A stretch of DNA of 64,000 bases. It comes from Macrostomum lignano. Lineage: Eukaryota. The translations under genes and the position numbers were made by a program. Location: NCBI GenBank assembly GCA_002269645.1, contig NIVC01001249.1, positions 162,654 to 226,653 of the forward strand. The letters are read 5' to 3'. A model generated the notes under the pieces. That model had not been told where the DNA came from. It saw only the letters and a program-made list of their open reading frames with translations, and did not search any database. Of this stretch, positions 226 through 64,000 are shown piece after piece (the stretch's first letter is position 1; each line of letters begins with the position of its first letter).

Positions 226-2458
226 ATGGGCGGAGGTCGTCGAGCTCCAGACGCGGTGTCGGCCTACGCCGGCTTCCTCAGTGGCGCTACGGTTCGCGCG
301 CTGCTGCAGCCGCTGGACGTGATCAAGATCAGGTGGCAACTGCAGCTGGAGTCCATCAGCAGACGGGGTGACGGCGGCACCTACCAGAGCCTGCCGCAGA
401 CTGTGGGCCGAATCCTACGGGAGGAAGGCGCTCGAGCACTGTGGAAGGGTCACGTGCCCTGCCAGGTGGTGTCGGTGCTGTTCAACTCGGTGCAGTTTTA
501 CACCTTCGAGCGCAGCGGGCCGCCAGTTCGGGAGCTTCTTGGAGGCGGCAGCGACTTTGGTGCAGACTTTGTGTGCGGCGGCATCTCTGGGGTAGCGGCG
601 GCGCTGAGCTGCCACCCGTTCGACACCTTGCGGACACGGCTGATTGGGCAGAGCGAGAAGAACCGCGTGTACTCTGGTCTGGTGCACGCTGTGACCCACA
701 TGTGGCGGTCGGAGGGTCCGCGTGTGTTCTTCCAGGTGAGTCACTGATTAGTGTGTTTTTCCAGGTGGGTCACTGACTGGTGTGTGTTCTTCCAGGTGGG
801 CCACTGACTGGTGTGTGTGTTCTTCCAGGTGGGTCACTGATTGGCGTGTGTGTTCTTCCAGGTGGGTCACTGATTGGCGTGTGTGTTCTTCCAGGTGGGC
901 CACTGACTGGTGTGTGTGTTCTTCCAGGTGGGTCACTGATTGGCGTGTGTGTTCTTCCAGGTGGGTCACTGACTGGTGTGTGTGTTTTTCCAGGTGGGTC
1001 ACTGATTGCTGTGTTCGGTCACTGAGTCAAAATTTTGTTACATAACTTCAGGGTACAATTGCATTTTCAAATCACAAATGCCAGTCAGTTTGCCTCATCA
1101 ATTTCCCCGCTCCATCTGCAGGGCCTGAATTCGAATCTGTGCATGACGATGCCGCAGGCGGCTAGCCGGTTCGCCTTCTACAAGCTGCTGTTCGGCCCCC
1201 TGGCCGACCGTTCTTCGGCGTCAGCCGCGGCCGCCGGCTCCGGCTTTCTGTCCGGCGTGCTGTCCAAGGCCCTCGTCTACCCCTTCGACGTCATGAAGAA
1301 GCGCCAGCAGGTGCGCGGCTTCGAGGCCGCCCGACGCGCGTTTGGCCGCGTGCAGGTGAACATGCTGACACCCTTTAGGACTGTCTGACACCCTTTAGGA
1401 CTGTCTGACACCCTTTAGGACTGTCTGACACTCTTTAGGACTGTCTGACACCCTTTGGGACTGTCTGACACCCTTTGGGACTGTCTGACACCCTTTAGGA
1501 CTGTCTGACACCCTTTAGGACTGTCTGACACCCTTTAGGACTGTCTGACACCCTTTGGGACTGTCTGACACCCTTTAGGACTGTCTGACACCCTTTGGGA
1601 CTGTCTGACACCCTTTAGGACTGTCTGACACCCTTTAGGACTGTCTGACACCCTTTGGGACTGTCTGAAACCCTATAAAACTTTCTGACACCCTAGTTAG
1701 GACTCTCTGACACCATTTGAACCTGTCTGACACCCCTGGCACTGTCTGAAACCTCCCTTTTAATGTCAAATGTTTCGTAATAATTTCTGACACTTTTAAC
1801 ACATTAATAATGTCTGACACCTCTAGGACACGTCAACTACCCAGACTGTCGCCTGACACTCCTAACAGGTACTCCATGACACTTCAGGGCTGTAGCCTAG
1901 TGTTTAGAGCGTCGGGCTCACGACTTGAAGGTCGGGGGTTCGATTCCCGATCGCACTGGAACAGTTTGCGTCTTTGAGCAAGACACTTAACTCTGCATTG
2001 CTTCAGTTCACCCAGCTGTAAAATGGGTGCCAGCATAATTGAGGGTGTGTGGCGACCCCCCAGTCCTTGGACTGAACAGCCGTACGCAGCCTTCAGATGC
2101 GCCGCGCAAATAGCTGCGGCTGAGCTGTCGGTTGCACATCTACCCAATTAGGGCAGTTGTAATCAACTATTGTATATTATTATATGACGCTTCAGCATAT
2201 CGTCTCGCATATCTGTTTCCCTCGGACTACCTCCGCCACCAATGCCCTCTCACGCACCCTACACAGCCCCGCTCCCCGCAGGACTCGGGCAGCAGCCGGA
2301 CCATCGCAGCCTGCGCCTCCTTCATCTGGCGCAACGAAGGCCTTCGCGGGTTCTACAAAGGCCTGGGCCCGTCAATGCTGAAGGCTGGCCTGTTCACGTC
2401 CACCACTTTCTACTTCTTTGAACTTTACCGCTCGCTAATTCTGTCCGCTTTGTACTAA
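226..2458 (+). CDS. SLC25A19: Mitochondrial thiamine pyrophosphate carrier-like (SLC25 family), copy 1, type-A 3' half; exons 226-735, 1122-1355, 2282-2458; 306 aa
   Basis: Three PxDxx[KR]xRxQ carrier signatures ([32 protein letters not shown]). The segments [18 protein letters not shown] and [12 protein letters not shown] resemble SLC25A19/Tpc1. Both introns are phase 0 with CAG|GTGAG and CAG|GTGAA donors and YCAG acceptors; the frame runs through to TAA. Confidence 0.88.
736..1010. repeat. 31-33-bp intron-1 minisatellite GTGGGTCACTGAYTGGYGTGTGTGTTCTTCCAG (also 4989-5131, 9110-9252, 13231-13725)
   Basis: The unit re-uses the last bases of exon 1 plus the donor; unit number varies between gene copies. 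Confidence 0.95.
1367..1670. repeat. 20-bp intron-2 minisatellite GACACCCTTT(A/G)GGACTGTCT (also 5488-5791, 9609-9912)
   Basis: About 15 units starting 11 nt after the donor. Confidence 0.95.
1887..2184 (+). mobile_element. tRNA-derived SINE with CORE-like central domain in carrier intron 2 (3' end approximate)
   Basis: A-box-like TGTAGCCTAGTG, B box GGTTCGATTCCC, then TTGAGCAAGACACTTAACTC...CTTCAGTTCACCCAGCTGTAAAATGGG, which resembles the MIR/CORE consensus as I recall it; AT-rich tail. Confidence 0.65.
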
Positions 2459-2902
2459 ACGCTAAAAATGCTCATATTGCTACTTCTATTGGCCAGGCTT
2501 TCAGTAGTACACGCGCGCATTTTTTGCTATTCTAACAACTGTACGAAATGTACTTAAGAATCGCATCAATTCAAAATTTGTGTGCAATTCAATTGTATTC
2601 GGATCGTCAACTACAGTATTGATCCTGTTTTGCTTACATATGAATGTTTTTGCTCTTATTTTCCATTATGTTCTGGATTAATGTTCCGTTTACTCAAGCT
2701 TGCTGCAATAAAAGTAGAAATATGTCTGCTTAATGCAGTCTTGGTGCTTTTGTGTGCCTTGTTTAATTATTATTTTCATTCTTCCTTTCTTTTTGTCTTT
2801 ACACTTTGAGTTTTTTTCGCTGGCTGCACACGTCTAAAAGCCGTTTAACTGTGCACACTTGATTGTGTTATCAAGCCAATATGGTGTGAATGTACTTGTA
2901 GG

Positions 2903-3500
2903 GTAAGAGATTTGCTTTTCTAACCCTGAATGTACATACATACATTATTGTTTGCAAGCCGTAGAGTAAGAACGTACATTCTGACAATGTACATTGCGGG
3001 GTAAGAGATTTGCTTTTCTAACCCTGAATGTACATTCATACTTTATTGTTTGCAAGCCATAGAGTAAGAACGTACATTCTGACAGTGTACATTGTGGGGT
3101 AAGAGATTTAATTTTCTAATCCCGAACGTACATTCTGTCTGTGTCATTCATGGGGCAAGAGATTTGCTCCTGTAACCCTGAATGTACATACTTTATTGTT
3201 AGCAAGTCATAGAGTAAGAACGTACATTCTGACAATGTACATTGCGGGGTAAGAGATTTGCTTTTCTAACCCTGAATGTACATTCATACTTTATTGTTTG
3301 CAAGCCATAAAATAAGAACGTACATTCTGACAGTGTACATTGTGGGGTAAGAGATTTAATTTTCTAATCCCGAACGTACATTCTGTCTGTGTCATTCATG
3401 GGGCAAGAGATTTGCTCCTGTAACCCTGAATGTACATACTTTATTGTTAGCAAGTCATAGAGTAAGAACGTACATTCTGTCAGTGGTAAGAGATTTTCTC
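2903..3500. repeat. Complex repeat with ~98-bp subunits and a 248-bp higher-order duplication, downstream of the type-A stop (also 7024-7621, 11145-11742)
   Basis: GTAAGAGATTTGCTTTTCTAACCCTGAATGTACAT recurs; block 3001-3248 is repeated at 3249-3496. Confidence 0.85.
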
Positions 3501-4112
3501 CTCTGCCCCTGAGCGTACATTGATTTTTTGTTAGCAAGTCACTTGCGTAAATGTACATTCTGTCAGAGTAACATTAGAAAATTCGTATTGTTCCTTTTAA
3601 TGGTTAAAAAATCTTTAATTAATTTTTATTCATTTGTTCTGCTGCTTTTAACATTAATTTTCTAAATAACAAAATCTACTGCAAGAAATCTTACCATGCC
3701 CTGTCGCGTGTACTTTTGCAACAATTATATCACCAACCAGCGGTAACGACCGTCGACCAACCATCCTTTGCCCCACTACGAGTAATGCATTTTTGATACT
3801 ATTGATAAATATAAAGTCCTGTGGTAATCTTTATTGATTAATTTTGTCGAAATTAATATCATTGAGGGGATGTTTAAAGATGTCAAAAAACGCTTTTAAT
3901 AAATTACTCTGCCACTACGGTCTGACTCATTCAGAGCTGTTTAAAAATTGGCTGAATTTACCTTGCTGCTCGAAGAACCAGTTGCCAACAATAAAAAGCT
4001 CCAGCAGCCAACCGGCAGTGGCGGTGAAAACCGTCTGAAACTGCCCACTCATAGTGGCGTGGCGGAGACATCGCAGTCAAAATTGTTTGAGGCAGAGAAG
4101 TCAGAGCAGGGC

Positions 4113-4478
4113 CAGCCAACCAGCAACGTTCAAACCAGCAACGTTCAAACCAGCAGCCAGCCAATCAGCAGCCAGCCAATCAGCAACCAGCCAACCAGCA
4201 GCCAGCCAACCAGCAGCCAGCCAACCAGCAGCCAGCCAACCAGCAACCAGCCAATCAGCAGCCAGCCAATCAGCAGCCACCCAATCAGTGGCCAGCCAAC
4301 CAGCAGCCAGCCAACCAGCAGCCACCCAACCAGCAGCCACCCAACCAGCAGCCAGCCAATCAGCAGCCACCCAACCAGCAGCCGCCCAACCAACAGTCAG
4401 CCAACCAGCAGCCAGCCAACCAGCAGCCCGCCAATCAGCAGCCAGCCAACCAGCAGCCAGCCAACCAGCAGCCAGCCA
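4113..4478. repeat. 15-bp minisatellite CAGCCAACCAGCAGC abutting the carrier ATG (also 1-225, 8234-8599, 12355-12720)
   Basis: Directly visible tandem units ending ...CAGCCAGCCA|ATG. Confidence 0.95.
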
Positions 4479-6579
4479 ATGGGCGGAGGTCGTCGAGCTC
4501 CAGACGCGGTGTCGGCCTACGCCGGCTTCCTCAGTGGCGCCACGGTTCGCGCGCTGCTGCAGCCGCTGGACGTGATCAAGATCAGGTGGCAACTGCAGCT
4601 GGAGTCCATCAGCAGACGGGGTGACGGCGGCACCTACCAGAGCCTGCCGCAGACTGTGGGCCGAATCCTACGGGAGGAAGGCGCTCGAGCACTGTGGAAG
4701 GGTCACGTGCCCTGCCAGGTGGTGTCGGTGCTGTTCAACTCGGTGCAGTTTTACACCTTCGAGCGCAGCGGGCCGCCAGTTCGGGAGCTGCTCGGAGGCG
4801 GCAGCGACTTTGGTGCAGACTTTGTGTGCGGCGGCATCTCTGGGGTAGCGGCGGCGCTGAGCTGCCACCCGTTCGACACCTTGCGGACACGGCTGATTGG
4901 GCAGAGCGAGAAGAACCGCGTGTACTCTGGTCTGGTGCACGCTGTGACCCACATGTGGCGGTCGGAGGGTCCGCGTGTGTTCTTCCAGGTGAGTCACTGA
5001 TTAGTGTGTTTTTCCAGGTGGGTCACTGACTGGTGTGTGTTCTTCCAGGTGGGCCACTGACTGGTGTGTGTGTTCTTCCAGGTGGGTCACTGACTGGTGT
5101 GTGTGTTTTTCCAGGTGGGTCACTGATTGCTGTGTTCGGTCACTGAGTCAAAATTTTGTTACATAACTTCAGGGTACAATTGCATTTTCAAATCACAAAT
5201 GCCAGTCAGTTTGCCTCATCAATTTCCCCGCTCCATCTGCAGGGCCTGAATTCGAATCTGTGCATGACGATGCCGCAGGCGGCTAGCCGGTTCGCCTTCT
5301 ACAAGCTGCTGTTCGGCCCCCTGGCCGACCGTTCTTCGGCGTCAGCCGCGGCCGCCGGCTCCGGCTTTCTGTCCGGCGTGCTGTCCAAGGCCCTCGTCTA
5401 CCCCTTCGACGTCATGAAGAAGCGCCAGCAGGTGCGCGGCTTCGAGGCCGCCCGACGCGCGTTTGGCCGCGTGCAGGTGAACATGCTGACACCCTTTAGG
5501 ACTGTCTGACACCCTTTAGGACTGTCTGACACCCTTTAGGACTGTCTGACACTCTTTAGGACTGTCTGACACCCTTTGGGACTGTCTGACACCCTTTGGG
5601 ACTGTCTGACACCCTTTAGGACTGTCTGACACCCTTTAGGACTGTCTGACACCCTTTAGGACTGTCTGACACCCTTTGGGACTGTCTGACACCCTTTAGG
5701 ACTGTCTGACACCCTTTGGGACTGTCTGACACCCTTTAGGACTGTCTGACACCCTTTAGGACTGTCTGACACCCTTTGGGACTGTCTGAAACCCTATAAA
5801 ACTTTCTGACACCCTAGTTAGGACTCTCTGACACCATTTGAACCTGTCTGACACCCCTGGCACTGTCTGAAACCTCCCTTTTAATGTCAAATGTTTCGTA
5901 ATAATTTCTGACACTTTTAACACATTAATAATGTCTGACACCTCTAGGACACGTCAACTACCCAGACTGTCGCCTGACACTCCTAACAGGTACTCCATGA
6001 CACTTCAGGGCTGTAGCCTAGTGTTTAGAGCGTCGGGCTCACGACTTGAAGGTCGGGGGTTCGATTCCCGATCGCACTGGAACAGTTTGCGTCTTTGAGC
6101 AAGACACTTAACTCTGCATTGCTTCAGTTCACCCAGCTGTAAAATGGGTGCCAGCATAATTGAGGGTGTGTGGCGACCCCCCAGTCCTTGGACTGAACAG
6201 CCGTACGCAGCCTTCAGATGCGCCGCGCAAATAGCTGCGGCTGAGCTGTCGGTTGCACATCTACCCAATTAGGGCAGTTGTAATCAACTATTGTATATTA
6301 TTATATGACGCTTCAGCATATCGTCTCGCATATCTGTTTCCCTCGGACTACCTCCGCCACCAATGCCCTCTCACGCACCCTACACAGCCCCGCTCCCCGC
6401 AGGACTCGGGCAGCAGCCGGACCATCGCAGCCTGCGCCTCCTTCATCTGGCGCAACGAAGGCCTTCGCGGGTTCTACAAAGGCCTGGGCCCGTCAATGCT
6501 GAAGGCTGGCCTGTTCACGTCCACCACTTTCTACTTCTTTGAACTTTACCGCTCGCTAATTCTGTCCGCTTTGTACTAA
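4479..6579 (+). CDS. SLC25A19: SLC25A19-like carrier, copy 2, type A; exons 4479-4988, 5243-5476, 6403-6579
   Basis: Same protein and splice sites as copy 1; exons 2-3 offset by exactly 4121 bp. Confidence 0.88.
6008..6305 (+). mobile_element. tRNA-derived SINE, copy in tandem unit 2
   Basis: Same as 1887-2184, +4121. Confidence 0.65.
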
Positions 6580-8599
6580 ACGCTAAAAATGCTCATATTG
6601 CTACTTCTATTGGCCAGGCTTTCAGTAGTACACGCGCGCATTTTTTGCTATTCTAACAACTGTACGAAATGTACTTAAGAATCGCATCAATTCAAAATTT
6701 GTGTGCAATTCAATTGTATTCGGATCGTCAACTACAGTATTGATCCTGTTTTGCTTACATATGAATGTTTTTGCTCTTATTTTCCATTATGTTCTGGATT
6801 AATGTTCCGTTTACTCAAGCTTGCTGCAATAAAAGTAGAAATATGTCTGCTTAATGCAGTCTTGGTGCTTTTGTGTGCCTTGTTTAATTATTATTTTCAT
6901 TCTTCCTTTCTTTTTGTCTTTACACTTTGAGTTTTTTTCGCTGGCTGCACACGTCTAAAAGCCGTTTAACTGTGCACACTTGATTGTGTTATCAAGCCAA
7001 TATGGTGTGAATGTACTTGTAGGGTAAGAGATTTGCTTTTCTAACCCTGAATGTACATACATACATTATTGTTTGCAAGCCGTAGAGTAAGAACGTACAT
7101 TCTGACAATGTACATTGCGGGGTAAGAGATTTGCTTTTCTAACCCTGAATGTACATTCATACTTTATTGTTTGCAAGCCATAGAGTAAGAACGTACATTC
7201 TGACAGTGTACATTGTGGGGTAAGAGATTTAATTTTCTAATCCCGAACGTACATTCTGTCTGTGTCATTCATGGGGCAAGAGATTTGCTCCTGTAACCCT
7301 GAATGTACATACTTTATTGTTAGCAAGTCATAGAGTAAGAACGTACATTCTGACAATGTACATTGCGGGGTAAGAGATTTGCTTTTCTAACCCTGAATGT
7401 ACATTCATACTTTATTGTTTGCAAGCCATAAAATAAGAACGTACATTCTGACAGTGTACATTGTGGGGTAAGAGATTTAATTTTCTAATCCCGAACGTAC
7501 ATTCTGTCTGTGTCATTCATGGGGCAAGAGATTTGCTCCTGTAACCCTGAATGTACATACTTTATTGTTAGCAAGTCATAGAGTAAGAACGTACATTCTG
7601 TCAGTGGTAAGAGATTTTCTCCTCTGCCCCTGAGCGTACATTGATTTTTTGTTAGCAAGTCACTTGCGTAAATGTACATTCTGTCAGAGTAACATTAGAA
7701 AATTCGTATTGTTCCTTTTAATGGTTAAAAAATCTTTAATTAATTTTTATTCATTTGTTCTGCTGCTTTTAACATTAATTTTCTAAATAACAAAATCTAC
7801 TGCAAGAAATCTTACCATGCCCTGTCGCGTGTACTTTTGCAACAATTATATCACCAACCAGCGGTAACGACCGTCGACCAACCATCCTTTGCCCCACTAC
7901 GAGTAATGCATTTTTGATACTATTGATAAATATAAAGTCCTGTGGTAATCTTTATTGATTAATTTTGTCGAAATTAATATCATTGAGGGGATGTTTAAAG
8001 ATGTCAAAAAACGCTTTTAATAAATTACTCTGCCACTACGGTCTGACTCATTCAGAGCTGTTTAAAAATTGGCTGAATTTACCTTGCTGCTCGAAGAACC
8101 AGTTGCCAACAATAAAAAGCTCCAGCAGCCAACCGGCAGTGGCGGTGAAAACCGTCTGAAACTGCCCACTCATAGTGGCGTGGCGGAGACATCGCAGTCA
8201 AAATTGTTTGAGGCAGAGAAGTCAGAGCAGGGCCAGCCAACCAGCAACGTTCAAACCAGCAACGTTCAAACCAGCAGCCAGCCAATCAGCAGCCAGCCAA
8301 TCAGCAACCAGCCAACCAGCAGCCAGCCAACCAGCAGCCAGCCAACCAGCAGCCAGCCAACCAGCAACCAGCCAATCAGCAGCCAGCCAATCAGCAGCCA
8401 CCCAATCAGTGGCCAGCCAACCAGCAGCCAGCCAACCAGCAGCCACCCAACCAGCAGCCACCCAACCAGCAGCCAGCCAATCAGCAGCCACCCAACCAGC
8501 AGCCGCCCAACCAACAGTCAGCCAACCAGCAGCCAGCCAACCAGCAGCCCGCCAATCAGCAGCCAGCCAACCAGCAGCCAGCCAACCAGCAGCCAGCCA

Positions 8600-10700
8600 A
8601 TGGGCGGAGGTCGTCGAGCTCCAGACGCGGTGTCGGCCTACGCCGGCTTCCTCAGTGGCGCCACGGTTCGCGCGCTGCTGCAGCCGCTGGACGTGATCAA
8701 GATCAGGTGGCAACTGCAGCTGGAGTCCATCAGCAGACGGGGTGACGGCGGCACCTACCAGAGCCTGCCGCAGACTGTGGGCCGAATCCTACGGGAGGAA
8801 GGCGCTCGAGCACTGTGGAAGGGTCACGTGCCCTGCCAGGTGGTGTCGGTGCTGTTCAACTCGGTGCAGTTTTACACCTTCGAGCGCAGCGGGCCGCCAG
8901 TTCGGGAGCTGCTCGGAGGCGGCAGCGACTTTGGTGCAGACTTTGTGTGCGGCGGCATCTCTGGGGTAGCGGCGGCGCTGAGCTGCCACCCGTTCGACAC
9001 CTTGCGGACACGGCTGATTGGGCAGAGCGAGAAGAACCGCGTGTACTCTGGTCTGGTGCACGCTGTGACCCACATGTGGCGGTCGGAGGGTCCGCGTGTG
9101 TTCTTCCAGGTGAGTCACTGATTAGTGTGTTTTTCCAGGTGGGTCACTGACTGGTGTGTGTTCTTCCAGGTGGGCCACTGACTGGTGTGTGTGTTCTTCC
9201 AGGTGGGTCACTGACTGGTGTGTGTGTTTTTCCAGGTGGGTCACTGATTGCTGTGTTCGGTCACTGAGTCAAAATTTTGTTACATAACTTCAGGGTACAA
9301 TTGCATTTTCAAATCACAAATGCCAGTCAGTTTGCCTCATCAATTTCCCCGCTCCATCTGCAGGGCCTGAATTCGAATCTGTGCATGACGATGCCGCAGG
9401 CGGCTAGCCGGTTCGCCTTCTACAAGCTGCTGTTCGGCCCCCTGGCCGACCGTTCTTCGGCGTCAGCCGCGGCCGCCGGCTCCGGCTTTCTGTCCGGCGT
9501 GCTGTCCAAGGCCCTCGTCTACCCCTTCGACGTCATGAAGAAGCGCCAGCAGGTGCGCGGCTTCGAGGCCGCCCGACGCGCGTTTGGCCGCGTGCAGGTG
9601 AACATGCTGACACCCTTTAGGACTGTCTGACACCCTTTAGGACTGTCTGACACCCTTTAGGACTGTCTGACACTCTTTAGGACTGTCTGACACCCTTTGG
9701 GACTGTCTGACACCCTTTGGGACTGTCTGACACCCTTTAGGACTGTCTGACACCCTTTAGGACTGTCTGACACCCTTTAGGACTGTCTGACACCCTTTGG
9801 GACTGTCTGACACCCTTTAGGACTGTCTGACACCCTTTGGGACTGTCTGACACCCTTTAGGACTGTCTGACACCCTTTAGGACTGTCTGACACCCTTTGG
9901 GACTGTCTGAAACCCTATAAAACTTTCTGACACCCTAGTTAGGACTCTCTGACACCATTTGAACCTGTCTGACACCCCTGGCACTGTCTGAAACCTCCCT
10001 TTTAATGTCAAATGTTTCGTAATAATTTCTGACACTTTTAACACATTAATAATGTCTGACACCTCTAGGACACGTCAACTACCCAGACTGTCGCCTGACA
10101 CTCCTAACAGGTACTCCATGACACTTCAGGGCTGTAGCCTAGTGTTTAGAGCGTCGGGCTCACGACTTGAAGGTCGGGGGTTCGATTCCCGATCGCACTG
10201 GAACAGTTTGCGTCTTTGAGCAAGACACTTAACTCTGCATTGCTTCAGTTCACCCAGCTGTAAAATGGGTGCCAGCATAATTGAGGGTGTGTGGCGACCC
10301 CCCAGTCCTTGGACTGAACAGCCGTACGCAGCCTTCAGATGCGCCGCGCAAATAGCTGCGGCTGAGCTGTCGGTTGCACATCTACCCAATTAGGGCAGTT
10401 GTAATCAACTATTGTATATTATTATATGACGCTTCAGCATATCGTCTCGCATATCTGTTTCCCTCGGACTACCTCCGCCACCAATGCCCTCTCACGCACC
10501 CTACACAGCCCCGCTCCCCGCAGGACTCGGGCAGCAGCCGGACCATCGCAGCCTGCGCCTCCTTCATCTGGCGCAACGAAGGCCTTCGCGGGTTCTACAA
10601 AGGCCTGGGCCCGTCAATGCTGAAGGCTGGCCTGTTCACGTCCACCACTTTCTACTTCTTTGAACTTTACCGCTCGCTAATTCTGTCCGCTTTGTACTAA
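8600..10700 (+). CDS. SLC25A19: SLC25A19-like carrier, copy 3, type A; exons 8600-9109, 9364-9597, 10524-10700
   Basis: Same as copy 2 at every position compared and in all ORF-track translations; +4121 bp. Confidence 0.85.
10129..10426 (+). mobile_element. tRNA-derived SINE, copy in tandem unit 3
   Basis: Same as 1887-2184, +8242. Confidence 0.65.
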
Positions 10701-12720
10701 ACGCTAAAAATGCTCATATTGCTACTTCTATTGGCCAGGCTTTCAGTAGTACACGCGCGCATTTTTTGCTATTCTAACAACTGTACGAAATGTACTTAAG
10801 AATCGCATCAATTCAAAATTTGTGTGCAATTCAATTGTATTCGGATCGTCAACTACAGTATTGATCCTGTTTTGCTTACATATGAATGTTTTTGCTCTTA
10901 TTTTCCATTATGTTCTGGATTAATGTTCCGTTTACTCAAGCTTGCTGCAATAAAAGTAGAAATATGTCTGCTTAATGCAGTCTTGGTGCTTTTGTGTGCC
11001 TTGTTTAATTATTATTTTCATTCTTCCTTTCTTTTTGTCTTTACACTTTGAGTTTTTTTCGCTGGCTGCACACGTCTAAAAGCCGTTTAACTGTGCACAC
11101 TTGATTGTGTTATCAAGCCAATATGGTGTGAATGTACTTGTAGGGTAAGAGATTTGCTTTTCTAACCCTGAATGTACATACATACATTATTGTTTGCAAG
11201 CCGTAGAGTAAGAACGTACATTCTGACAATGTACATTGCGGGGTAAGAGATTTGCTTTTCTAACCCTGAATGTACATTCATACTTTATTGTTTGCAAGCC
11301 ATAGAGTAAGAACGTACATTCTGACAGTGTACATTGTGGGGTAAGAGATTTAATTTTCTAATCCCGAACGTACATTCTGTCTGTGTCATTCATGGGGCAA
11401 GAGATTTGCTCCTGTAACCCTGAATGTACATACTTTATTGTTAGCAAGTCATAGAGTAAGAACGTACATTCTGACAATGTACATTGCGGGGTAAGAGATT
11501 TGCTTTTCTAACCCTGAATGTACATTCATACTTTATTGTTTGCAAGCCATAAAATAAGAACGTACATTCTGACAGTGTACATTGTGGGGTAAGAGATTTA
11601 ATTTTCTAATCCCGAACGTACATTCTGTCTGTGTCATTCATGGGGCAAGAGATTTGCTCCTGTAACCCTGAATGTACATACTTTATTGTTAGCAAGTCAT
11701 AGAGTAAGAACGTACATTCTGTCAGTGGTAAGAGATTTTCTCCTCTGCCCCTGAGCGTACATTGATTTTTTGTTAGCAAGTCACTTGCGTAAATGTACAT
11801 TCTGTCAGAGTAACATTAGAAAATTCGTATTGTTCCTTTTAATGGTTAAAAAATCTTTAATTAATTTTTATTCATTTGTTCTGCTGCTTTTAACATTAAT
11901 TTTCTAAATAACAAAATCTACTGCAAGAAATCTTACCATGCCCTGTCGCGTGTACTTTTGCAACAATTATATCACCAACCAGCGGTAACGACCGTCGACC
12001 AACCATCCTTTGCCCCACTACGAGTAATGCATTTTTGATACTATTGATAAATATAAAGTCCTGTGGTAATCTTTATTGATTAATTTTGTCGAAATTAATA
12101 TCATTGAGGGGATGTTTAAAGATGTCAAAAAACGCTTTTAATAAATTACTCTGCCACTACGGTCTGACTCATTCAGAGCTGTTTAAAAATTGGCTGAATT
12201 TACCTTGCTGCTCGAAGAACCAGTTGCCAACAATAAAAAGCTCCAGCAGCCAACCGGCAGTGGCGGTGAAAACCGTCTGAAACTGCCCACTCATAGTGGC
12301 GTGGCGGAGACATCGCAGTCAAAATTGTTTGAGGCAGAGAAGTCAGAGCAGGGCCAGCCAACCAGCAACGTTCAAACCAGCAACGTTCAAACCAGCAGCC
12401 AGCCAATCAGCAGCCAGCCAATCAGCAACCAGCCAACCAGCAGCCAGCCAACCAGCAGCCAGCCAACCAGCAGCCAGCCAACCAGCAACCAGCCAATCAG
12501 CAGCCAGCCAATCAGCAGCCACCCAATCAGTGGCCAGCCAACCAGCAGCCAGCCAACCAGCAGCCACCCAACCAGCAGCCACCCAACCAGCAGCCAGCCA
12601 ATCAGCAGCCACCCAACCAGCAGCCGCCCAACCAACAGTCAGCCAACCAGCAGCCAGCCAACCAGCAGCCCGCCAATCAGCAGCCAGCCAACCAGCAGCC
12701 AGCCAACCAGCAGCCAGCCA

Positions 12721-15700
12721 ATGGGCGGAGGTCGTCGAGCTCCAGACGCGGTGTCGGCCTACGCCGGCTTCCTCAGTGGCGCCACGGTTCGCGCGCTGCT
12801 GCAGCCGCTGGACGTGATCAAGATCAGGTGGCAACTGCAGCTGGAGTCCATCAGCAGACGGGGTGACGGCGGCACCTACCAGAGCCTGCCGCAGACTGTG
12901 GGCCGAATCCTACGGGAGGAAGGCGCTCGAGCACTGTGGAAGGGTCACGTGCCCTGCCAGGTGGTGTCGGTGCTGTTCAACTCGGTGCAGTTTTACACCT
13001 TCGAGCGCAGCGGGCCGCCAGTTCGGGAGCTGCTCGGAGGCGGCAGCGACTTTGGTGCAGACTTTGTGTGCGGCGGCATCTCTGGGGTAGCGGCGGCGCT
13101 GAGCTGCCACCCGTTCGACACCTTGCGGACACGGCTGATTGGGCAGAGCGAGAAGAACCGCGTGTACTCTGGTCTGGTGCACGCTGTGACCCACATGTGG
13201 CGGTCGGAGGGTCCGCGTGTGTTCTTCCAGGTGGGTCACTGATTGGCGTGTGTGTTCTTCCAGGTGGGTCACTGATTGGCGTGTGTGTTCTTCCAGGTGG
13301 GTCACTGATTGGCGTGTGTGTTCTTCCAGGTGGGTCACTGATTGGCGTGTGTTCTTCCAGGTGGGTCACTGATTGGCGTGTGTTCTTCCAGGTGGGTTAC
13401 TGATTAGTGTGATCTTCCAGATGGGTCACTGATTAGTGTGTTCTTCCAGGTGGGTCCCTGATTAGTGTGTTCTTCCAGGTGGGTCACTGATTGGTGTGTT
13501 TTCTTCCAGGTGGGTCACTGATTGGTGTGTGTTCTTCCAGGTGGGACACTGATTGCTGTGTTTTCTTCCAGGTGGGTCACTGATTGGCGTGTGTTCTTCC
13601 AGGTGGGTCACTGATTAGTGTGTTCTTCCAGCTGGGTCACTGACTGGTGTGTGTTCTTCCAGGTGGGTCACTGATTGGTGTGTTTTCTTCCAGGTGGGTC
13701 ACTGATTGCTGTGTGTTCTTCCAGGTGTGACACGGATCGGTGTGTACTATGTTTCATTGGCTTTCCACGTTACATACTGGCCCTGTGGGTCAGAGTGGCC
13801 CTGTGCCGTAGCAAATCTGCAGTCTAATATCTTGCTCCATCACTTTGCCGCAGGGCCTGGGCCCCAACCTAGCCATGATGGCCGGTCAGTCCAGTGTGCA
13901 CTTTGCCGTCTACCACGGCCTGCGCCGCCTCCTGAACGACGTCGACGGCAGTGTCGGCAGCAGCGGGGGCGACGCCCTGACGGCAGGTTTCGCGGCCGGC
14001 GTGGCAGCCAAGTCGGTAGTTTATCCGCTGGACGTGCTGAAGAAGCGCCAGCAGGTCCGCGGCTTCGAGGCTGCCCGACTCTGCTTTGGCCGGGTGCAGG
14101 TGAGGCTGGAGCTGGTATGGTAGTCATATCCCAGTCACATCCCAGTCACATGCCAGTCACATTCCAGTCGCATGACAGTCACTTCAATCACAGGTATGCC
14201 ACATCCCAGTCACAGATAAGCCACATCCCAGTCACAGGAAAGCCACATCCCAGTCACAGGTAAGCCACCTCCGAGTCACAGATAAGTGACATCCCAGTCA
14301 CAGCTCAGTCACATCGCAGTCTCAGATAAGCCACATCCAAGTCACAGATAAGCCACATCCAAGTCACAGATAAGCCACATCCAAGTCACAGGTAAGCCAC
14401 CTCCGAGTCACAGATAAGTGACATCCCAGTCACAGCTCAGTCACATCGCAGTCTCAGATAAGCCACATCCAAGTCACAGATAAGCCACATCCCAGTCACA
14501 GGAAAGCCACATCCCAGTCACAGGTAAGCCACCTCCGAGTCACAGATAAGTGACATCCCAGTCACAGCTCAGTCACATCGCAGTCTCAGATAAGCCACAT
14601 CCAAGTCACAGATAAGCCACATCCAAGTCACAGATAAGCCACATCCAAGTCACAGGTAAGCCACCTCCGAGTCACAGATAAGTGACATCCCAGTCACAGC
14701 TCAGTCACATCGCAGTCTCAGATAAGCCACATCCAAGTCACAGATAAGCCACATCCCAGTCACAGGAAAGCCACATCCCAGTCACAGGTAAGTCACATCC
14801 AAGTCACAGATAAGCCACATCCCAGTCACAGATAAGTGACATCCCAGTCACAGATAAGTGACATCCCAGTCACAGGTAAGCCACATCCAAGTCACAGGTA
14901 AGCCACATCCCAGTCACAGGTAAGTCACATCCCAGTCACAGGTAAGCCACATCCCAGTCACAGATAAGTCACATCCCAGTCACAGATAAGTCACATCCCA
15001 GTCACAGATAAGTCACATCCCAGTCACAGGAAAGCCACATCCCAGTCACAGGTAAGCCACATCCCAGTCACAGGTAAGCCACATCCCAGTCACAGGAAAG
15101 CCACATCCCAGTCACAGGTAAACCACATCCAAGTCACAGGTAAGCCACATCCCAGTCACAGGTAAGCCACATCCCAGTCACAAATAAGCCACATCCCAGT
15201 CACAGATAAGTCACATCCCAGTCACAGATAAGTCACATCCCAGTCACAGGAAAGCCACATCCCAGTCACAGGTAAGCCACATCCCAGTCACAGATAAGTC
15301 ACATCCCAGTCACAGGAAAGCCACATCCCAGTCACAGGTAAGCCACATCCCAGTCACAGGTTAGTCACATCCCAGTCACAGGTAAGCCACATCCCAGTCA
15401 CAGGTAAGCCACATCCCAGTCACAGGTAAGCCACATCCCAGTCACAGGTAAGCCACATCTTAGTCACAGGTAAGCCACATCCCAGTCACAGGTAAGCCAC
15501 ATCTTAGTCACAGGTAAGCCACATCCCAGTTACACCTGAGCCTGCCACAGCTCATCCAGTGCCCCCAATTCGCTGCTCAAACCGCAGACTCCGGCCAGTC
15601 GCTGGGCCGCTGCCTACGCAGCCGACATGATTCGCCGAGAAGGCCCCACCGCGCTGTTCAAAGGCTTCGTTCCCGCTGCCATGAAGTCTGGTCTGGTTAC

Positions 15701-15758
15701 TGGGCTCACGTTTTACACCTATGAGGCCTATGTGGCCCTGCTGGTTGATAAACGCTAA
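12721..15758 (+). CDS. SLC25A19: SLC25A19-like carrier, copy 4, type-B 3' half; exons 12721-13230, 13854-14099, 15588-15758; 308 aa
   Basis: Exon 1 matches copies 2-3. Exon 2 reads GLGPNLAMMAGQS...[26 protein letters not shown]. Exon 3 (hand-translated, absent from the ORF track) reads TPASRWAAAYAADMIRREGPTALFKGFVPAAMKSGLVTGLTFYTYEAYVALLVDKR*. Phase-0 GT/AG introns at the same positions as type A. Confidence 0.82.
14122..15530. repeat. 22-bp minisatellite (G/A)TAAGCCACATCCCAGTCACAG with 132-bp higher-order repeat, type-B intron 2
   Basis: Variant CCTCCGAG recurs at 14268, 14400, 14532, 14664 (period 132 = 6x22). Confidence 0.95.
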
Positions 15759-17521: not shown

Positions 17522-20500
17522 TCAGTATGACCTGGCCTCAGCCTTCGGCCGCTTCAGCTGCACCTTGAGCCGCTTGCAGCCCACCTGGAAGCCGTTCATG
17601 GCCTGGATGGCCAAGGCGGCAGAGGTGGCATTGTCGAAGCTGACAAAGCCGAAGCACTTGCTCTGGCTGGTGGCCCGGTCAATGTACACCTTGGCGGAGA
17701 TCACCGTGCCGAATGGGGCGAACATCTGGGCGAGTTCGCAGTCGCCAAACTCGGCGGGCAGATGATAGATGAACAGGTTGGCAGCGTCTGGCCCGGTGAG
17801 AATGAAGTCGCTGGAGCCGTCCTTGTGCTGCACCGGCATTGTGATGGCGCGCTGGGCGATGGCCGCGGCCGAGATGGCCGGGTAGGCCGATGGGTACGCG
17901 GCTGCTGGTGGGTGGCAGGTGCGGGATGGGGTGAGAAAATTTCCTATCGTTCGTTTCGAGTGGCAACATCCGGTGGACATTAAAGTACACAGGTGGACAT
18001 TATGGCACACAGGTGGACATTATGGCACACAGGTGGACATTATGGCACACAGGTGGAAATTATGACACACAGGCGGACATTATGACACACAGGTGTACAT
18101 TCAAGCACACAGGCGGACATTATGGCACACAGGTGGACATTATGGCACACAGGTGGACATTATGACACACAGGTGGACATTATGGCACACAGGTGGACAT
18201 TATGGCACACAGGTGGACATTATGGTACACAGGTGGACATTATGGCACACAGGTGGACATTATGGCACACAGGTGGACATTATGGTACACAGATGGACAT
18301 TCAAGCACACAGGTGGACATTATGGTACACAGATGGACATTCAGGCACACAGGTGGACATTATGGCACACAGGTGGACATTCAGGCACACAGGTGGACAT
18401 TCAAGCACACAGGTGAACATTCAGGCACACAGGTGGATATTCAGGCACGCAGGTGGACATTGTGGCACACAGGTGGACATTCAGGCACACAGGTGGACAT
18501 TATGGCACGTAGGTGGACATTGTGATACACAGGTGGACATTCAAGCACACAGGTGAACATTCAGGCACACAGGTGGACATTCAGGCACACAGGTGGATAT
18601 TCAGGCACACAGGTGGACATTCAGGCACACAGGTGGATATTCAAGCACACAAACATGAACATATACTAGTACATATCCTTAAGATAGCAAACGCATTATA
18701 CAACGCAGGCAATCAAGCATCTCTCACCCATAGATGCAAACGGATGCATAGTGGCCGAGTACATGGCGTGCATTGGCTCAGAACCTACAATTGGAAAGTT
18801 TAGGAAACGGATCTTATGTACGTGCATTGGTAATTGGGATTATCTAGAAATGGGAGAATTGGGATTGATTATCTGGGGAATTGGGATTGATTATCGACGG
18901 AATCGGGATTGATTATCTGGGAAATTGGCATTGATTATCTGGGGAATTGGGATTGATTATCTGGGGAATTGGGATTTATTATCTGGGGAATTGAGATTGA
19001 TTATCTGGGGAATTGAGATTGATTATCTGGGGAATTGAGATTGATTAACTGGGGAATTGAGATTGATTATCTGGGGAATTGGCATTGATTTTTTGGGGAA
19101 TTGGGATTGATTATCGGCGGAATCGGGATTGATTATCTGGGGAATCGGGATTGATTATCGGCGGAATCGGGATTGATTATCTGGGGAATCGGATTGATTA
19201 TCGGCGGAATCGGGATTGATTATCTGGGGAATCGGGATTGATTATCGGCGGAATCGGGATTGATTATCTGGGGAATCGGGATTGATTATCTGGGGAATCG
19301 GGATTGATTATCGGCGGAATCGGGATTGATTATCTGGGGAATCGGGATTGATTATCGGCGGAATTGGGATTGATTATCTGGGGAATTGGGATTGATTATC
19401 TGGGGAATTGGGATTGATTATCTGGGGAATTGGGATTGATTATCTGGGGAATTGGGATTGATTATCTGGGGAATTGGGATTGATTATCTGGGGAATTGGG
19501 ATTGATTATCTGGGGAATTGAGATTGATTATCTGGGGAATTGAGATTGATTATCTGGGGAATTGGGATTGATTATCTGGGGAATTGGGATTGATTATCTG
19601 GGGAATTGGGATTGATTATCTGGGGAATTGGGATTGATTATCTGGGGAATTGGGAGTTATTAACTTGGTGGCTAGTATTCCCCCGTCAGAGGATTGGGGA
19701 TTTACAGTGGGCTTCAGTATCAAATATCTCAGCCGATATGTATCGAAAATGCATTTCACTCACTATTAAAAAATGCATTCGAAGCGCCACCGTTGGAGGT
19801 GAAAATCTGCGACTGGTCAGGCGGGCTGCCCGGGTTCCCGGCGGCAACAAGAGCGGTCGGCAGCTGCAGATGGTGCGGCGGTGGCGGAGGCGGCGGGACG
19901 GACATCGGCGCCTGAAGCTGCGGTGGTGCGCCAAGGCCGGCCAAAGCTGATTGAGGACTCTGCAGGCCTGGCAGTGCCTGATGGTGTTGCTGCTGCTGCT
20001 GCTGCTGCTGAGCAGCCTGAAGCTGCACAGCGAGTGCCGCCATGGGGTTCACGTAGCCGGAGCTCTGCTGCAGCTGGTTCTGCTGCACCAGTGATGGGAT
20101 TAATTTGGGATCATGTATGGGATTCCAATCCCATATATTGGGATTCCTATGTTGATAGGACCAACATGGGATCACAGATAGGGTCACAGATGGATTAATT
20201 AGGGCTCGTAGGTTGAATCAATTTAGGATTGTAGATGGGATCAATTTGGGATCATAGTTGGGATCAATTTTGGATCATAGATGGGATCAATTTGGGATCA
20301 TAGATAGGATCAATTCGGGATCATAGATGGGATCAATTTGGGATCATAGATGGGATCAATTTTGGATCATAGATGGGATCAATTTTGAATCATAGATAGG
20401 ATCAATTCGGGATCATAGATGGGATCAATTAGGGATCATAAATGGGATCAACTAGATCGTAGATGGGACCAATTTGGAATCCTAGATTTGATCAATTGAG

Positions 20501-39529: not shown

Positions 39530-39880
39530 CTGGAGTGTACATTGGGAGTAAGGAGGCTGACGGCTTAGGAAGGAGTGTGAATGTACATAGGGGGCAAGAG
39601 GATTGACGGCCCAGGAAGGACTGTGTGAATGTACATTGGGGGTAAGAGGGTTGACGGCCCAGGAAGGAGTGTGAATGTACATTGGGGGTAAGAGGGTTGA
39701 CGGCCCAGGAAGGAGTGTGAATGTACATTGGGGGTAAGAGGGTTGACGGCCCAGGAAGGAGTGTGTGAATGTACATTGGGGGTAAGAGGGTTGACGGCCC
39801 AGGAAGGAGTGTGAATGTACATTGGGGGTAAGAGAGTTTACGGCCCAGGAAGGAGTGTGATTGTTCATTGGGGGTAAGAG
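39530..39880. repeat. ~51-53-bp minisatellite GAATGTACATTGGGGGTAAGAGGGTTGACGGCCCAGGAAGGAGTGT
   Basis: About 6 units. Confidence 0.9.
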
Positions 39881-40097
39881 GATTGACCGTCAGGGCTGGG
39901 AAGATGGGTGAGCGCGAGCGTACATTGGGGCAAAGAGCATTTGCACTCTAAAAGGATAACAAATAATAAACGGTGCAAGGAACAACATGAAAAGATAGGC
40001 ACTACATGTATGAACTGGATAAAACAGAGACGAGTTGGAATTTAAAACTAGATTCTTTCGTTAAAAAACACGCGAATGAATGAATGAATGAATCTAT

Positions 40098-41202
40098 TTA
40101 GTTAATAATATTTCCGGCAATCTGTTGCGGCCCACCGCCGCTGCGTCCGTGCGCTTCAAAGCAACCCATCGGATAGGCGGCCACAGTGCTATTAACCAGA
40201 TTAACTAGCAGATCCAAGCAGCCTCTTAATCGAGTCTTGTGCTCGCTATGCAGCATTACAGTATAGCTAGTGTTGCGAAAGCTGGCGCACAATTCTAAGG
40301 CAGAACCGGCGCAGAGCACGGGCGGTCTGGCCGCCCCCAGTAGCTGTTCAACCACCACCGTACCGCTATTCGCTAGCACTATTCTAGTGCGCAATGATTT
40401 GCGATGAACCTCGTAACGAAAATCGATGCACACAGTCTGTTCGAGGCGGATTGGCCGGAGGGCCACGCGGGCGCAGCAATGGCACAGTTCGGAGATGCTG
40501 CCGCACCGACAGCTGCCAGCGTTCGCGTCAAAGTCGGGCTGGATTGACACCATATAGGCCTTGATAGGGTGGGTTGTCGGGTGGCGCATTGGTCACGAGT
40601 GAGGACCAGTTCTGAGGCAATTGTTGGGGAGCGGATTAGGGGCGATTCTTGGTGAGCGGAGTAGGGGCGATTCTTGGGGAGCGGAGTAGGGGCGATTCTT
40701 GTGGAGCTACTGACGGGCGATTATTGTGGAGCTACTTCAAGCCAGATTAGCATTCAATTTAACTGCTGTGTTAATTATTTACCAGCGTCTTGTGCGCAGT
40801 CTTCTGCAGTTCCATCATCTGCATTGTATCAGCCAGCAGTTCCGCTAGTCGGGCCTGAGACACATTGTAATTGAAAGCAAAATGTCTGGAAGCTGGTCCA
40901 ATTAAGACTTGACCAGCGCCAATCAATGATGAGGCATTGCCCTTTAAATTTCCCCGCAGTTTATTGTAGAAAGCTTTGGCATAGCCTAGACGAGAAGAAT
41001 CTGTATGACCATTACTATTGGCGGCGTCAAGATCAGAATTGATGCTGCTGCCATCACTGGCCCCAATCCATGCATAATGCAGCATTATTAATGCCATTGC
41101 GCAGAGCAGAATGCACAGCAGAAAGTTTTGCTTGCAACAGAAGAAATGCTTGCAGCAACGAAAGCTTAAGCGAGGCATTTCTTTGTTGTTTTGAAAGTTC
41201 AC
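40098..41202 (-). CDS. Probable DUF4773-like Cys-rich domain protein with N-terminal signal/anchor helix; tentative exons 41202-40783 and 40538-40098
   Basis: The downstream ORF has CRC...CHCC...C(IDFR)Y...RPPVLC...LELCASFRN...GCLDL...GCF, matching the DUF4773 Cys spacing as I recall it. The upstream ORF has hydrophobic NFLLCILLCAMALIMLHYAWIG and a phase-0 CTG|GTAAAT donor. The acceptor choice is uncertain. Confidence 0.55.
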
Positions 41203-63301: not shown

Positions 63302-64000
63302 TGCTTCTGCACTCCTGTAGCTGACTGTCGGCAGGGAAGAAGTCGCCTTTCCAAAATCAAAACTCAAATCGAACCAATTTATTAAGCTCCAGTAGATTAA
63401 TGGCTAAATCTATATAGCTATTCGTCCATTGGCTCTGACTTTGAGCACCAATAGCTGCGATTAGCATTTTTGATCCTTCGTTTATTCACATAGATTCAGT
63501 TCAGAAATAGCTACTCACGATTTAAATAGGACACTGAGGTTTCTTTCCTCTTTCCTTCTCTGTTAAAGCCTGATAAAGAGATGCTATATCCGCATGCTCA
63601 GGGTGGGTGGCTTTACTGTGCCCAGATGTAGTCTATTGGATGCAATGGACTGTTATTACTCATAACTGGTCTTTAAACTCTTTGGCATGTTTTGGAAAGT
63701 AGATAAAACATACAAAAACATACAAAGTATAAAGAGTAACAAGACAATTGTTTAAAATGGTCTTGATAGCTATAGCTATAATGCACAGGCTATTTCTCAA
63801 AACATTAATCCTTCATTTCTTCCACATTTGTTAAAAAGTGTTTTGTGTTATCTTGTCAAGGAACTAAAGCGAAGCAACGTACTGGGGCCGTTTAATATTT
63901 TTACGGAGTATTTTAGTGTCAGTACCAGCGTGTGGATGCCTCAGCAGTATCCTGCAGCGCAGTGTCTGTCTGTCGGCAAAGTTAAGCAAATACAGCTCTT

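What the first reader, a model, noticed from the sequence alone, without database searches (positions are those of the whole stretch)
12721..15758. One constant N-half, two ancient C-halves: a modular half-swap in a mitochondrial carrier array
Seen: copy 4 shares exon 1 (helices 1-3, 170 aa) essentially base-for-base with the type-A copies. Its exons 2-3 (helices 4-6) are a distant paralogue ([20 protein letters not shown] vs GLGPNLAMMAGQSSVHFAVY; [13 protein letters not shown] vs LFKGFVPAAMKSG) with unrelated intron-2 and 3' sequences. The switch point lies inside the shared intron-1 minisatellite. Established: in SLC25 carriers substrate contact point 1 is on H2, contact points 2 and 3 on H4 and H6, and CP2 is the main substrate-class discriminator. 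Inference: either unequal crossover or gene conversion through the minisatellite created chimeric carriers, or the locus is a constant exon 1 with alternative 3' modules giving carriers with different specificity or kinetics.
Basis: partly seen in the sequence, partly recalled or inferred. Interest (0 to 1): 0.8.

Follow-up and report, generated by a model that had tools for sequence, protein, structure and literature searches.

The report
Chimeric tandem mitochondrial carrier genes in flatworm
In the flatworm Macrostomum lignano, neighbouring thiamine-pyrophosphate-carrier genes share an identical first exon but have two long-diverged back halves, which is best explained by ordinary recombination between neighbouring gene copies rather than by a new modular gene system.

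Summary
The window is the last 64 kb of a Macrostomum lignano contig. It carries four SLC25A19/TPC-like genes in tandem. Exon 1 (510 nt, helices 1-3) is 100% identical in copies 2-4 and differs at 3 synonymous sites in copy 1. Copies 1-3 continue with C-half A and copy 4 with C-half B. The two C-halves share 46% of amino acids, with dS about 1. No non-coding homology remains except a 33-nt intron-1 minisatellite built from the exon-1/donor junction.

Identity between copy 3 and copy 4 stops 3 nt past exon 1. Positions 945-13233 are perfectly periodic (4,121 bp), so the A unit was amplified very recently or the assembly homogenised it. A second annotation, from a different consensus sequence, shows the same A-to-B adjacency and the same exon 1 to 2B join.

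The best reading is ectopic recombination between old tandem paralogues at the exon 1/minisatellite boundary, of the Lepore or anti-Lepore kind or by conversion. Which copy is the chimera cannot be resolved here. The "one exon 1 with alternative 3' modules" reading is not supported, because every module has its own exon 1 and 5' flank. Both C-halves keep TPC-type conserved residues. This is a new member of a known kind, of moderate interest.

The parts
226..735 (+). Copy 1 exon 1 (170 aa, helices 1-3). It has 3 synonymous differences from copies 2-4.
736..1016 (+). Copy 1 intron-1 minisatellite, 9 units. It includes three 'b' units identical to the first three units of copy 4.
1122..1355 (+). 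Copy 1 exon 2A
2282..2458 (+). Copy 1 exon 3A with stop codon (copy 3 coordinates minus 8242)
945..13233 (+). Perfectly periodic stretch, 2.98 units of 4,121 bp with zero mismatches. Both ends lie in or at an intron-1 minisatellite.
4479..4988 (+). Copy 2 exon 1
5243..5476 (+). Copy 2 exon 2A
6403..6579 (+). Copy 2 exon 3A with stop codon. The annotated CDS ends here.
8600..9109 (+). Copy 3 exon 1
9110..9258 (+). Copy 3 intron-1 minisatellite, 5 A-type units. It is identical in copy 2 (4989-5137).
9364..9597 (+). Copy 3 exon 2A (helix 4 to helix 5)
10524..10700 (+). Copy 3 exon 3A (helix 6) with stop codon
12187..12720 (+). 5' region shared by copies 2-4. It is an open frame without an ATG and contains a 15-nt minisatellite (12353-12720) that abuts the ATG. 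The GenBank models annotate it as an SQPTSS-repeat N-terminal extension.
12721..13230 (+). Copy 4 exon 1, 100% identical to copies 2 and 3
13231..13745 (+). Copy 4 intron-1 minisatellite, about 17 units of 29-33 nt. Each unit repeats the last 12 nt of exon 1 plus the donor (TTCTTCCAG|GTGGGT).
13854..14099 (+). Exon 2B (helix 4 to helix 5). Only its last 108 nt align to exon 2A (79.6%).
14136..15534 (+). Intron-2B minisatellite, 22-nt unit x 64, unrelated to the 20-nt minisatellite of intron 2A
15588..15758 (+). Exon 3B (helix 6) with stop codon

Best explanation
These are ordinary, separately equipped mitochondrial carrier genes of the SLC25A19 (thiamine pyrophosphate carrier) type, arranged in a head-to-tail array in Macrostomum lignano. 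Two old paralogues, A and B, once had their own full coding sequences. Ectopic recombination between the neighbouring copies then broke at the exon 1/intron-1 boundary, where a 33-nt minisatellite made from the exon-1 end plus splice donor sits. This placed one and the same 5' module (5' flank, 5' minisatellite, exon 1 = helices 1-3) in front of both kinds of 3' module (exons 2-3 = helices 4-6). Two routes give this result. In a Lepore-type deletion, the exon 1 of the last A copy was fused to 2B-3B, so copy 4 is the chimera. In an anti-Lepore-type duplication, B's exon 1 was placed in front of 2A-3A, so the A copies are the chimeras. Unequal crossing-over then amplified the 4,121-bp A unit to three identical copies. 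Shown: the anatomy, the sharp switch, the age contrast and the exchange of minisatellite units. Inferred: the recombination route, its direction, and that both chimeric forms are expressed.
For: All four copies lie in tandem on one strand, with intron positions and phases conserved between A and B.

The age contrast is extreme. Exon 1 has 0-3 synonymous differences, while the C-halves have dS about 1.0 and 46% amino-acid identity.

The C-halves are each other's nearest neighbour, but only just ahead of other phyla. They form an exclusive NJ clade in 36 of 50 bootstraps. The split between them is therefore old.

Identity between copy 3 and copy 4 ends 3 nt past exon 1. Beyond that, only minisatellite units are shared.

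The exact 33-nt 'b' unit occurs three times in copy 1's A-type array and three times at the start of copy 4's array. It occurs nowhere else in the window, and 0 matches are expected by chance. This is direct evidence of exchange or common descent of the two arrays.

The perfectly periodic stretch 945-13233 begins and ends at intron-1 minisatellites.

Both C-halves retain conserved TPC residues (31/36 and 29/36) and both proteins have three Mito_carr repeats. Each C-half therefore belonged to a working gene until recently.

A second protein model, A0A1I8GR87, comes from a different consensus sequence: it has 2 small indels in the N-terminal extension. It shows gene A followed by exon 1 joined to 2B.

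The GenBank models derive from an RNA-seq-guided transcript assembly (PMC5730564).

The same process is documented for HBB/HBD chimeric fusion genes (PMC4041002).
Against: No diverged 'native' exon 1 is present in the window, so neither parental 5' half has been seen.

Homologous recombination between paralogues with dS about 1 needs some homology. That homology must have been the minisatellite, or the first event was illegitimate, or conversion has been continuous.

The 5' limit of the shared tract cannot be defined, because identity runs through the whole array unit and copy 1 is cut by the window edge.

Zero differences over 12.3 kb, including five internal minisatellites, could reflect consensus homogenisation or a miscount of copies in a PacBio/Canu assembly. 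This genome is known for redundancy: 180-312 Mb duplicated and 15% tandem repeats.

I saw no reads and no transcripts directly.
Confidence: 0.62

Rival explanations
1. Long-term concerted evolution. A and B are old full-length tandem paralogues whose 5' halves (flank plus exon 1) have been continuously homogenised by interparalogue gene conversion ever since duplication. The minisatellite blocks the conversion tracts, so only the 3' halves diverged.
For: The boundary is sharp at a repeat array. 'b' units are interspersed within copy 1's A-type array in the order a1 a2 a3 b b a3 b a4 a5, a patchy, conversion-like pattern. This route solves the homology problem, because the 5' halves never diverged. 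Two layers of 5' similarity exist: 98.5% for copy 1 against the others, and 100% among copies 2-4.
Against: It would have to be sustained over a period long enough for dS to saturate in the 3' halves. GC3 of exon 1 (0.79) is not raised relative to the C-halves (0.84 and 0.75), so there is no sign of biased conversion. The identical tract among copies 2-4 is a whole array unit, which looks like crossing-over or duplication rather than a short tract.
Confidence: 0.17
2. Assembly artefact. The join of exon 1 to one of the 3' halves, or the number or identity of the 4,121-bp units, was produced by the assembler or polisher in a repeat-rich, partly polyploid genome.
For: The 2.98 units are 100% identical, including the fast-mutating minisatellites. 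The assembly is Canu on older PacBio reads, with substantial redundancy. M. lignano is a hidden polyploid that is difficult to assemble (abstract of PMC10468722).
Against: The minisatellite at the join is only about 515 bp, far shorter than the reads. Copy 1 was kept distinct, with 3 synonymous differences and a different unit count. A model from a different consensus shows the same A-to-B order and the same exon 1-2B splice, although both assemblies used the same PacBio reads. The RNA-guided annotation calls both forms. An artefact is more likely for the copy number than for the existence of both gene types.
Confidence: 0.1
3. A true modular system: one constant N-half is combined by splicing with alternative 3' modules, giving carriers with different specificity or kinetics. 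The repeated exon 1 copies would be a recent overlay.
For: Both modules are phase-0 compatible and intact. The residues at contact point II appear to differ, Met-Thr in A and Met-Met in B (my alignment by eye to the ADP/ATP carrier; inference). All five gene names share one transcript-cluster prefix, Mlig025088, which might mean run-through transcription.
Against: Each 3' module has its own exon 1 and identical 5' flank, so no alternative choice is needed. Reaching the present layout from one exon 1 with two modules needs at least two extra rearrangements with precise breakpoints (my reasoning). Both C-halves remain TPC-like and equally distant from orthologues.
Confidence: 0.06

Closest known systems
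Lepore / anti-Lepore chimeric fusion genes of the beta-globin cluster (HBD/HBB, HBB/HBD) (Gaudry et al. 2014, PMC4041002)
   Same: Tandem paralogues lie in one orientation. Unequal crossing-over or interparalogue conversion gives genes with the 5' part (promoter and first exon) of one paralogue and the 3' part of the other. The parental copies are often lost afterwards.
   Different: Here the parental 3' halves are far more diverged (46% amino-acid identity, dS saturated). The break is at an intronic minisatellite derived from the exon-intron junction. The array was further amplified to identical 4.1-kb units. Neither parental 5' half has been seen. The family is SLC25, not globin.
Human G-gamma/A-gamma globin gene conversion bounded by a simple-sequence (TG)n stretch in intron 2 (Slightom, Blechl and Smithies 1980; from my own knowledge, not checked here)
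   Same: The 5' portion of two tandem duplicates is almost identical and the 3' portion is diverged, with the switch at a simple repeat inside an intron.
   Different: The gamma genes are young duplicates that differ by a few percent in the 3' part. Here the 3' halves are old paralogues, and the repeat is a 33-nt minisatellite containing the splice donor.
Mutually exclusive exons 3A/3B of the mitochondrial phosphate carrier SLC25A3 (from my own knowledge, not checked here)
   Same: An SLC25 carrier in which a constant part is combined with one of two alternative, duplicated coding modules, giving isoforms with different kinetics.
   Different: SLC25A3 has one promoter and one copy of the constant exons, and the choice is made by splicing. 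Here every module has its own exon 1 and 5' flank, so the genes are separate.
SLC25A19 / Tpc1 thiamine pyrophosphate carriers
   Same: All best hits outside M. lignano are annotated TPCs at 41-45% identity. The proteins have three Mito_carr repeats. The PxDxx[KR]x[KR] motif is present on helices 1, 3 and 5 ([32 protein letters not shown]).
   Different: Transport was not tested. There are two C-half versions. The annotated 5' extension of SQPTSS repeats has no counterpart in the orthologues.

Membership tests
SLC25 mitochondrial carrier (TPC/SLC25A19-like) | Three tandem Mito_carr repeats of about 100 aa | tested here: met
   Pfam PF00153 matches three stretches in both A (E=4e-56) and B (E=8.5e-56).
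SLC25 mitochondrial carrier (TPC/SLC25A19-like) | Signature PX[DE]XX[KR]X[KR] on helices 1, 3 and 5 | tested here: met
   Read directly from the translations: [16 protein letters not shown], and PFDVMKKR (A) or PLDVLKKR (B). The helix-5 columns P, D, K and R are conserved.
SLC25 mitochondrial carrier (TPC/SLC25A19-like) | Closest relatives are TPC orthologues | tested here: met
   every named top hit is a 'mitochondrial thiamine pyrophosphate carrier', at 41-45% identity.
SLC25 mitochondrial carrier (TPC/SLC25A19-like) | Transports ThPP or deoxynucleotides | not testable with these tools
   Needs a liposome assay or tpc1 complementation.
Chimeric fusion gene by unequal crossing-over (Lepore / anti-Lepore type) | Tandem paralogues in the same orientation | tested here: met
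Chimeric fusion gene by unequal crossing-over (Lepore / anti-Lepore type) | Abrupt switch in divergence between the 5' and 3' segments of one gene | tested here: met
   Identity is 100% up to 13233. After that nothing aligns except minisatellite units and 108 nt of exon 2. dS is 0-0.02 in exon 1 against about 1.0 in the C-halves.
Chimeric fusion gene by unequal crossing-over (Lepore / anti-Lepore type) | Both parental genes, or orthologues of each, are identifiable, so that each segment can be assigned to a parent | tested here: not met
   There is no second, diverged exon 1 in the window. No other Macrostomum TPC is in the protein collection. The contig upstream of the window could not be read.
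Interparalogue gene conversion tract | A tract of near-identity bounded on both sides by diverged sequence | tested here: inconclusive
   The 3' boundary is sharp. The 5' boundary cannot be seen, because identity continues through the whole array unit and copy 1 is cut by the window start.
Single gene with alternative 3' modules (mutually exclusive exon sets) | One shared first exon or promoter upstream of several alternative modules | tested here: not met
   There are four copies of exon 1, each with the same 5' flank and each directly upstream of one module. They are annotated as four separate genes.
Single gene with alternative 3' modules (mutually exclusive exon sets) | Transcripts join one exon 1 to either module | not testable with these tools
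   No read-level or cDNA data are available here.

The most novel reading that the evidence does not exclude
The locus could be a long-lived two-module carrier family. One N-terminal half (helices 1-3, contact point I) would be kept identical in all copies by concerted evolution that is stopped by a minisatellite born from the exon-1 splice junction. Two old C-terminal halves (helices 4-6, contact points II and III) would be maintained by selection as functionally distinct partners. That would be a natural combinatorial 'half-carrier' design giving two TPC-like transporters with different properties.
Probability: 0.1. Interest if true: 0.65.

Novelty: new member of a known kind. Interest (0 to 1): 0.36.

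Why it matters
If both forms are expressed and active, this is a natural half-swap experiment in an SLC25 carrier. The same helices 1-3 would work with two versions of helices 4-6 that share only 46% of their residues. That would bear on how modular the three-repeat carrier fold is, and on how far contact points II and III alone set transport properties. It is also a clean textbook-style case of a splice-junction-derived minisatellite marking the boundary of recombination between paralogues. Finally, it shows how gene arrays expand in the repeat-rich M. lignano genome. If it is only a very recent Lepore-type accident, the chimera may be non-functional and the locus is of local interest only.

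Tried and rejected
- **Spliced-protein look-up.** The look-up worked with P0001, but the 10-kb flank did not reach beyond the window start. The contig upstream of record position 162,654 therefore stayed unread.
- **Homologue searches.** Two searches, with B and with A, found no further Macrostomum TPC. The next-best hits are 41-45% identical and from other phyla. The collection lacks even the annotated 476-aa and 513-aa A proteins, so this absence is not informative.
- **Literature search for Mlig025088.** No hits.
- **Assigning exon 1 to A or B.** Three approaches failed. GC3 is 0.79 for exon 1 against 0.84 and 0.75 for the C-halves. Mean similarity to 118 orthologues is 76.2 bits for CA and 75.0 bits for CB. 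In a relative-rate comparison of N-half against C-half identity, A gives -0.055 and B -0.072, against an orthologue mean of -0.035 with sd 0.025.
- **Minisatellite ends.** The way each minisatellite ends gives no clear breakpoint, because both arrays end in degenerate partial units.
- **Second carrier exon 1.** A search of the remaining 48 kb found none.
- **tRNA and Rfam scans.** Both were negative.
- **First NJ bootstrap script.** It timed out and was redone.
Full report
**Source and setting**

Searching with the spliced copy-4 protein returned a 100% identical, full-coverage match. The match is GenBank PAA70323.1, 'hypothetical protein BOX15_Mlig025088g5, partial [Macrostomum lignano]'. Its gene lies on contig NIVC01001249.1 (226,653 bp) of assembly GCA_002269645.1. 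From the coordinates, the window is the last 64 kb of that contig (record 162,654-226,653).

This assembly (Mlig_3_7) is a Canu re-assembly of published PacBio reads plus Illumina and 454 data. It has 15% simple and tandem repeats and 180-312 Mb of duplicated sequence. Its gene models come from an RNA-seq-guided transcript assembly. Transcripts that cluster at 95% share a name prefix (PMC5730564). The window is packed with minisatellites, so an intronic minisatellite is not unusual here.

**The observation**

- **Exon 1 copies.** Exon 1 (510 nt, 170 aa) occurs at 226-735, 4479-4988, 8600-9109 and 12721-13230. The last three are identical. Copy 1 differs at three third-codon positions, all synonymous.
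- **Gene models.** With canonical GT-AG, phase-0 introns, copies 1-3 continue with exons 2A and 3A (306 aa). Copy 4 continues with exons 2B and 3B (308 aa).
- **Protein family.** Both proteins have three Mito_carr repeats. All their named relatives are thiamine pyrophosphate carriers at 41-45% identity.
- **Swap point.** It lies between residues 170 and 171, inside the second repeat, between the matrix helix after H3 and H4. 'Helices 1-3 versus 4-6' is therefore correct.
- **Divergence of the C-halves.** They share 45-46% of residues, with dS about 1.0 (saturated) and dN about 0.55.
- **Remaining nucleotide homology.** Downstream of exon 1, only the minisatellite units and the last 108 nt of exon 2 (79.6%) align. 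That exon-2 stretch encodes the conserved [19 protein letters not shown] motif.

**Finer anatomy**

- **Perfect periodicity.** The sequence satisfies w[i]=w[i+4121] for every i from 945 to 9112. Positions 945-13233 are therefore 2.98 perfectly identical units.
- **Limits of that stretch.** The left limit lies in copy 1's intron-1 minisatellite. The right limit lies 3 nt after exon 1 of copy 4 (GTGA versus GTGG).
- **What is shared.** Copy 4 shares with the A copies not just exon 1 but everything upstream of it. Copy 1's 5' region (4-884) is 98.5% identical to the others.
- **The minisatellite unit.** It is 29-33 nt long and repeats the last 12 nt of exon 1 plus the donor (GTGTTCTTCCAG|GTGGGTCACTGA...). 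It arose from the exon 1/intron 1 junction and travels with exon 1.
- **Unit counts.** Copies 2 and 3 have five units (a1-a5). Copy 1 has nine, in the order a1 a2 a3 b b a3 b a4 a5. Copy 4 has about 17, starting b b b.
- **The 'b' unit.** The exact 33-nt 'b' unit occurs six times in the window: three in copy 1 and three in copy 4. The A-type and B-type arrays have therefore exchanged units or share recent ancestry.

**Is the join real?**

UniProt A0A1I8GR87 (757 aa) is a run-on model from a different consensus sequence. It has two one-residue deletions in the repeat extension relative to the window. It contains the A protein (303 of 306 residues), then the 5' extension, then exon 1 joined to exon 2B. 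A second model, A0A1I8JBK1, is A-type.

The two assemblies share PacBio reads, so this is independent assembly but not independent data. The minisatellite at the join is only about 515 bp. The GenBank models for both forms derive from RNA-seq-based transcripts.

I rate an artefactual join as unlikely (about 10%). The number of identical 4.1-kb units is less secure.

**What it most likely is**

Both C-halves keep the residues conserved across 117 TPC orthologues. A keeps 31 of 36 conserved columns and B keeps 29, including the helix-6 lysine. Both are about equally distant from the orthologues. Each therefore belonged to a working gene for most of its history.

They are each other's nearest neighbour, but barely: 46% against 43-44% to other phyla, with an exclusive clade in 36 of 50 bootstraps. 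The A/B split is old, yet exon 1 shows 0-3 silent differences.

The simplest account is ectopic recombination between tandem paralogues, with the break at the exon 1/minisatellite boundary. Unequal crossing-over then amplified the 4,121-bp unit.

Two directions fit the window equally well.
- **Lepore-type deletion.** Exon 1 of the last A copy was fused to 2B-3B. Copy 4 is then the chimera, and B's native exon 1 is lost.
- **Anti-Lepore-type duplication.** The duplicated segment ran from intron 1 of A to intron 1 of B. The A copies in the window are then the chimeras, and A's native exon 1 lies further upstream.

The name g5 for copy 4 implies at least one more related gene that I could not see.

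Paralogues this diverged offer no homology for recombination except the minisatellite. The founding event was therefore minisatellite-mediated or illegitimate. Otherwise the 5' halves were never allowed to diverge (the concerted-evolution rival, about 17%).

The event is so recent that an intact reading frame says nothing about whether the chimeric protein works.

**The modular reading**

A single constant exon 1 with alternative 3' modules is not what the DNA shows. Each module has its own exon 1, 5' minisatellite and flank. The locus is annotated as four genes. Deriving the present layout from one exon 1 with two modules needs extra, precisely placed rearrangements.

By my own alignment to the ADP/ATP carrier, contact point II would be Met-Thr in A and Met-Met in B, compared with Ala-Ile in human SLC25A19. 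Contact point III would be Lys in all three. This is an inference, not a test, and it does not indicate a change of substrate class.

**Comparison with known cases**

The closest documented analogue is the repeated origin of HBB/HBD chimeric fusion genes, by unequal crossing-over or conversion in the beta-globin cluster (PMC4041002). From memory, the G-gamma/A-gamma conversion tract that ends at an intronic simple repeat is an even closer structural parallel. The SLC25A3 exon 3A/3B pair is the known SLC25 example of real alternative modules.

Compared with these cases, the present locus differs in four ways:
- the 3' halves are far more diverged;
- the boundary repeat is derived from the splice junction;
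- the unit was later amplified;
- the gene family is SLC25, not globin.

It is a new member of a known kind.

**Verdict**

The alternative-module half is not supported. Interest is moderate (0.36).

Noticed in passing
window 12187-12720 (also 3945-4478 and 8066-8599; partial copy at 1-225): The frame of exon 1 stays open for 178 codons upstream of the first ATG, with no in-frame ATG. Most of this stretch is a 15-nt minisatellite (about 25 units) that encodes SQPTSS-like repeats and abuts the ATG. The GenBank models include it as a 159-207-aa N-terminal extension (5'-partial CDS). The M. lignano spliced leader ends in ATG (PMC8629364), so translation of the extension from a trans-spliced mRNA cannot be excluded. 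A 5'-UTR repeat is the simpler reading.
   Followed up: partly
window 13231-13745 (also 736-1016, 4989-5137, 9110-9258): Each unit of the intron-1 minisatellite ends in TTCTTCCAG|GTGGGT, an acceptor-like tract directly followed by a copy of the exon-1 donor. This resembles a recursive-splice-site motif, repeated 5-17 times. Read-through past the first donor hits a TGA after three codons, so only the first donor gives the carrier.
   Followed up: partly
window 14136-15534: Intron 2B is almost entirely a 22-nt minisatellite (about 64 units, CACATCCCAGTCACAGGTAAGC). Each unit carries a consensus-like 5' splice site, CAG|GTAAGC. Intron 2A instead has an unrelated 20-nt minisatellite (9607-9995).
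   Followed up: no
window about 10125-10200 (periodic copies about 1883 and about 6004): Intron 2A contains a tRNA-like segment (GGCTGTAGCCTAGTG...GGTTCGATTCCCGATCGCACTGG) with a box-B-like motif. It is probably a tRNA-derived SINE fragment. ARAGORN and Rfam report nothing there.
   Followed up: partly
window 16000-39900: This stretch is a nearly continuous series of different minisatellites (periods 4-46 nt) with strong, alternating strand skews. Exons of an RRM-domain gene (CELF/Bruno-like by eye) lie on the minus strand, for example 17522-18010 (RRM_1, E=3e-16).
   Followed up: partly
window 40098-40589 (-), 55892-56506 (+), 61606-63367 (-): Other gene fragments are present: a DUF4773 domain ORF, a GOST seven-transmembrane (GPR107/108-like) exon, and two exons of an amiloride-sensitive sodium channel (ASC/ENaC/degenerin family).
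   Followed up: partly
window 11131-11808 (also 2889-3566 and 7010-7687) and 39536-39887: The intergenic part of the A unit carries nested 98/150/248-nt tandem repeats with a 'GTACATT...GGGGTAAGAG' core. A similar core recurs in a 46-nt array at 39.5 kb, which suggests a dispersed repeat family.
   Followed up: no
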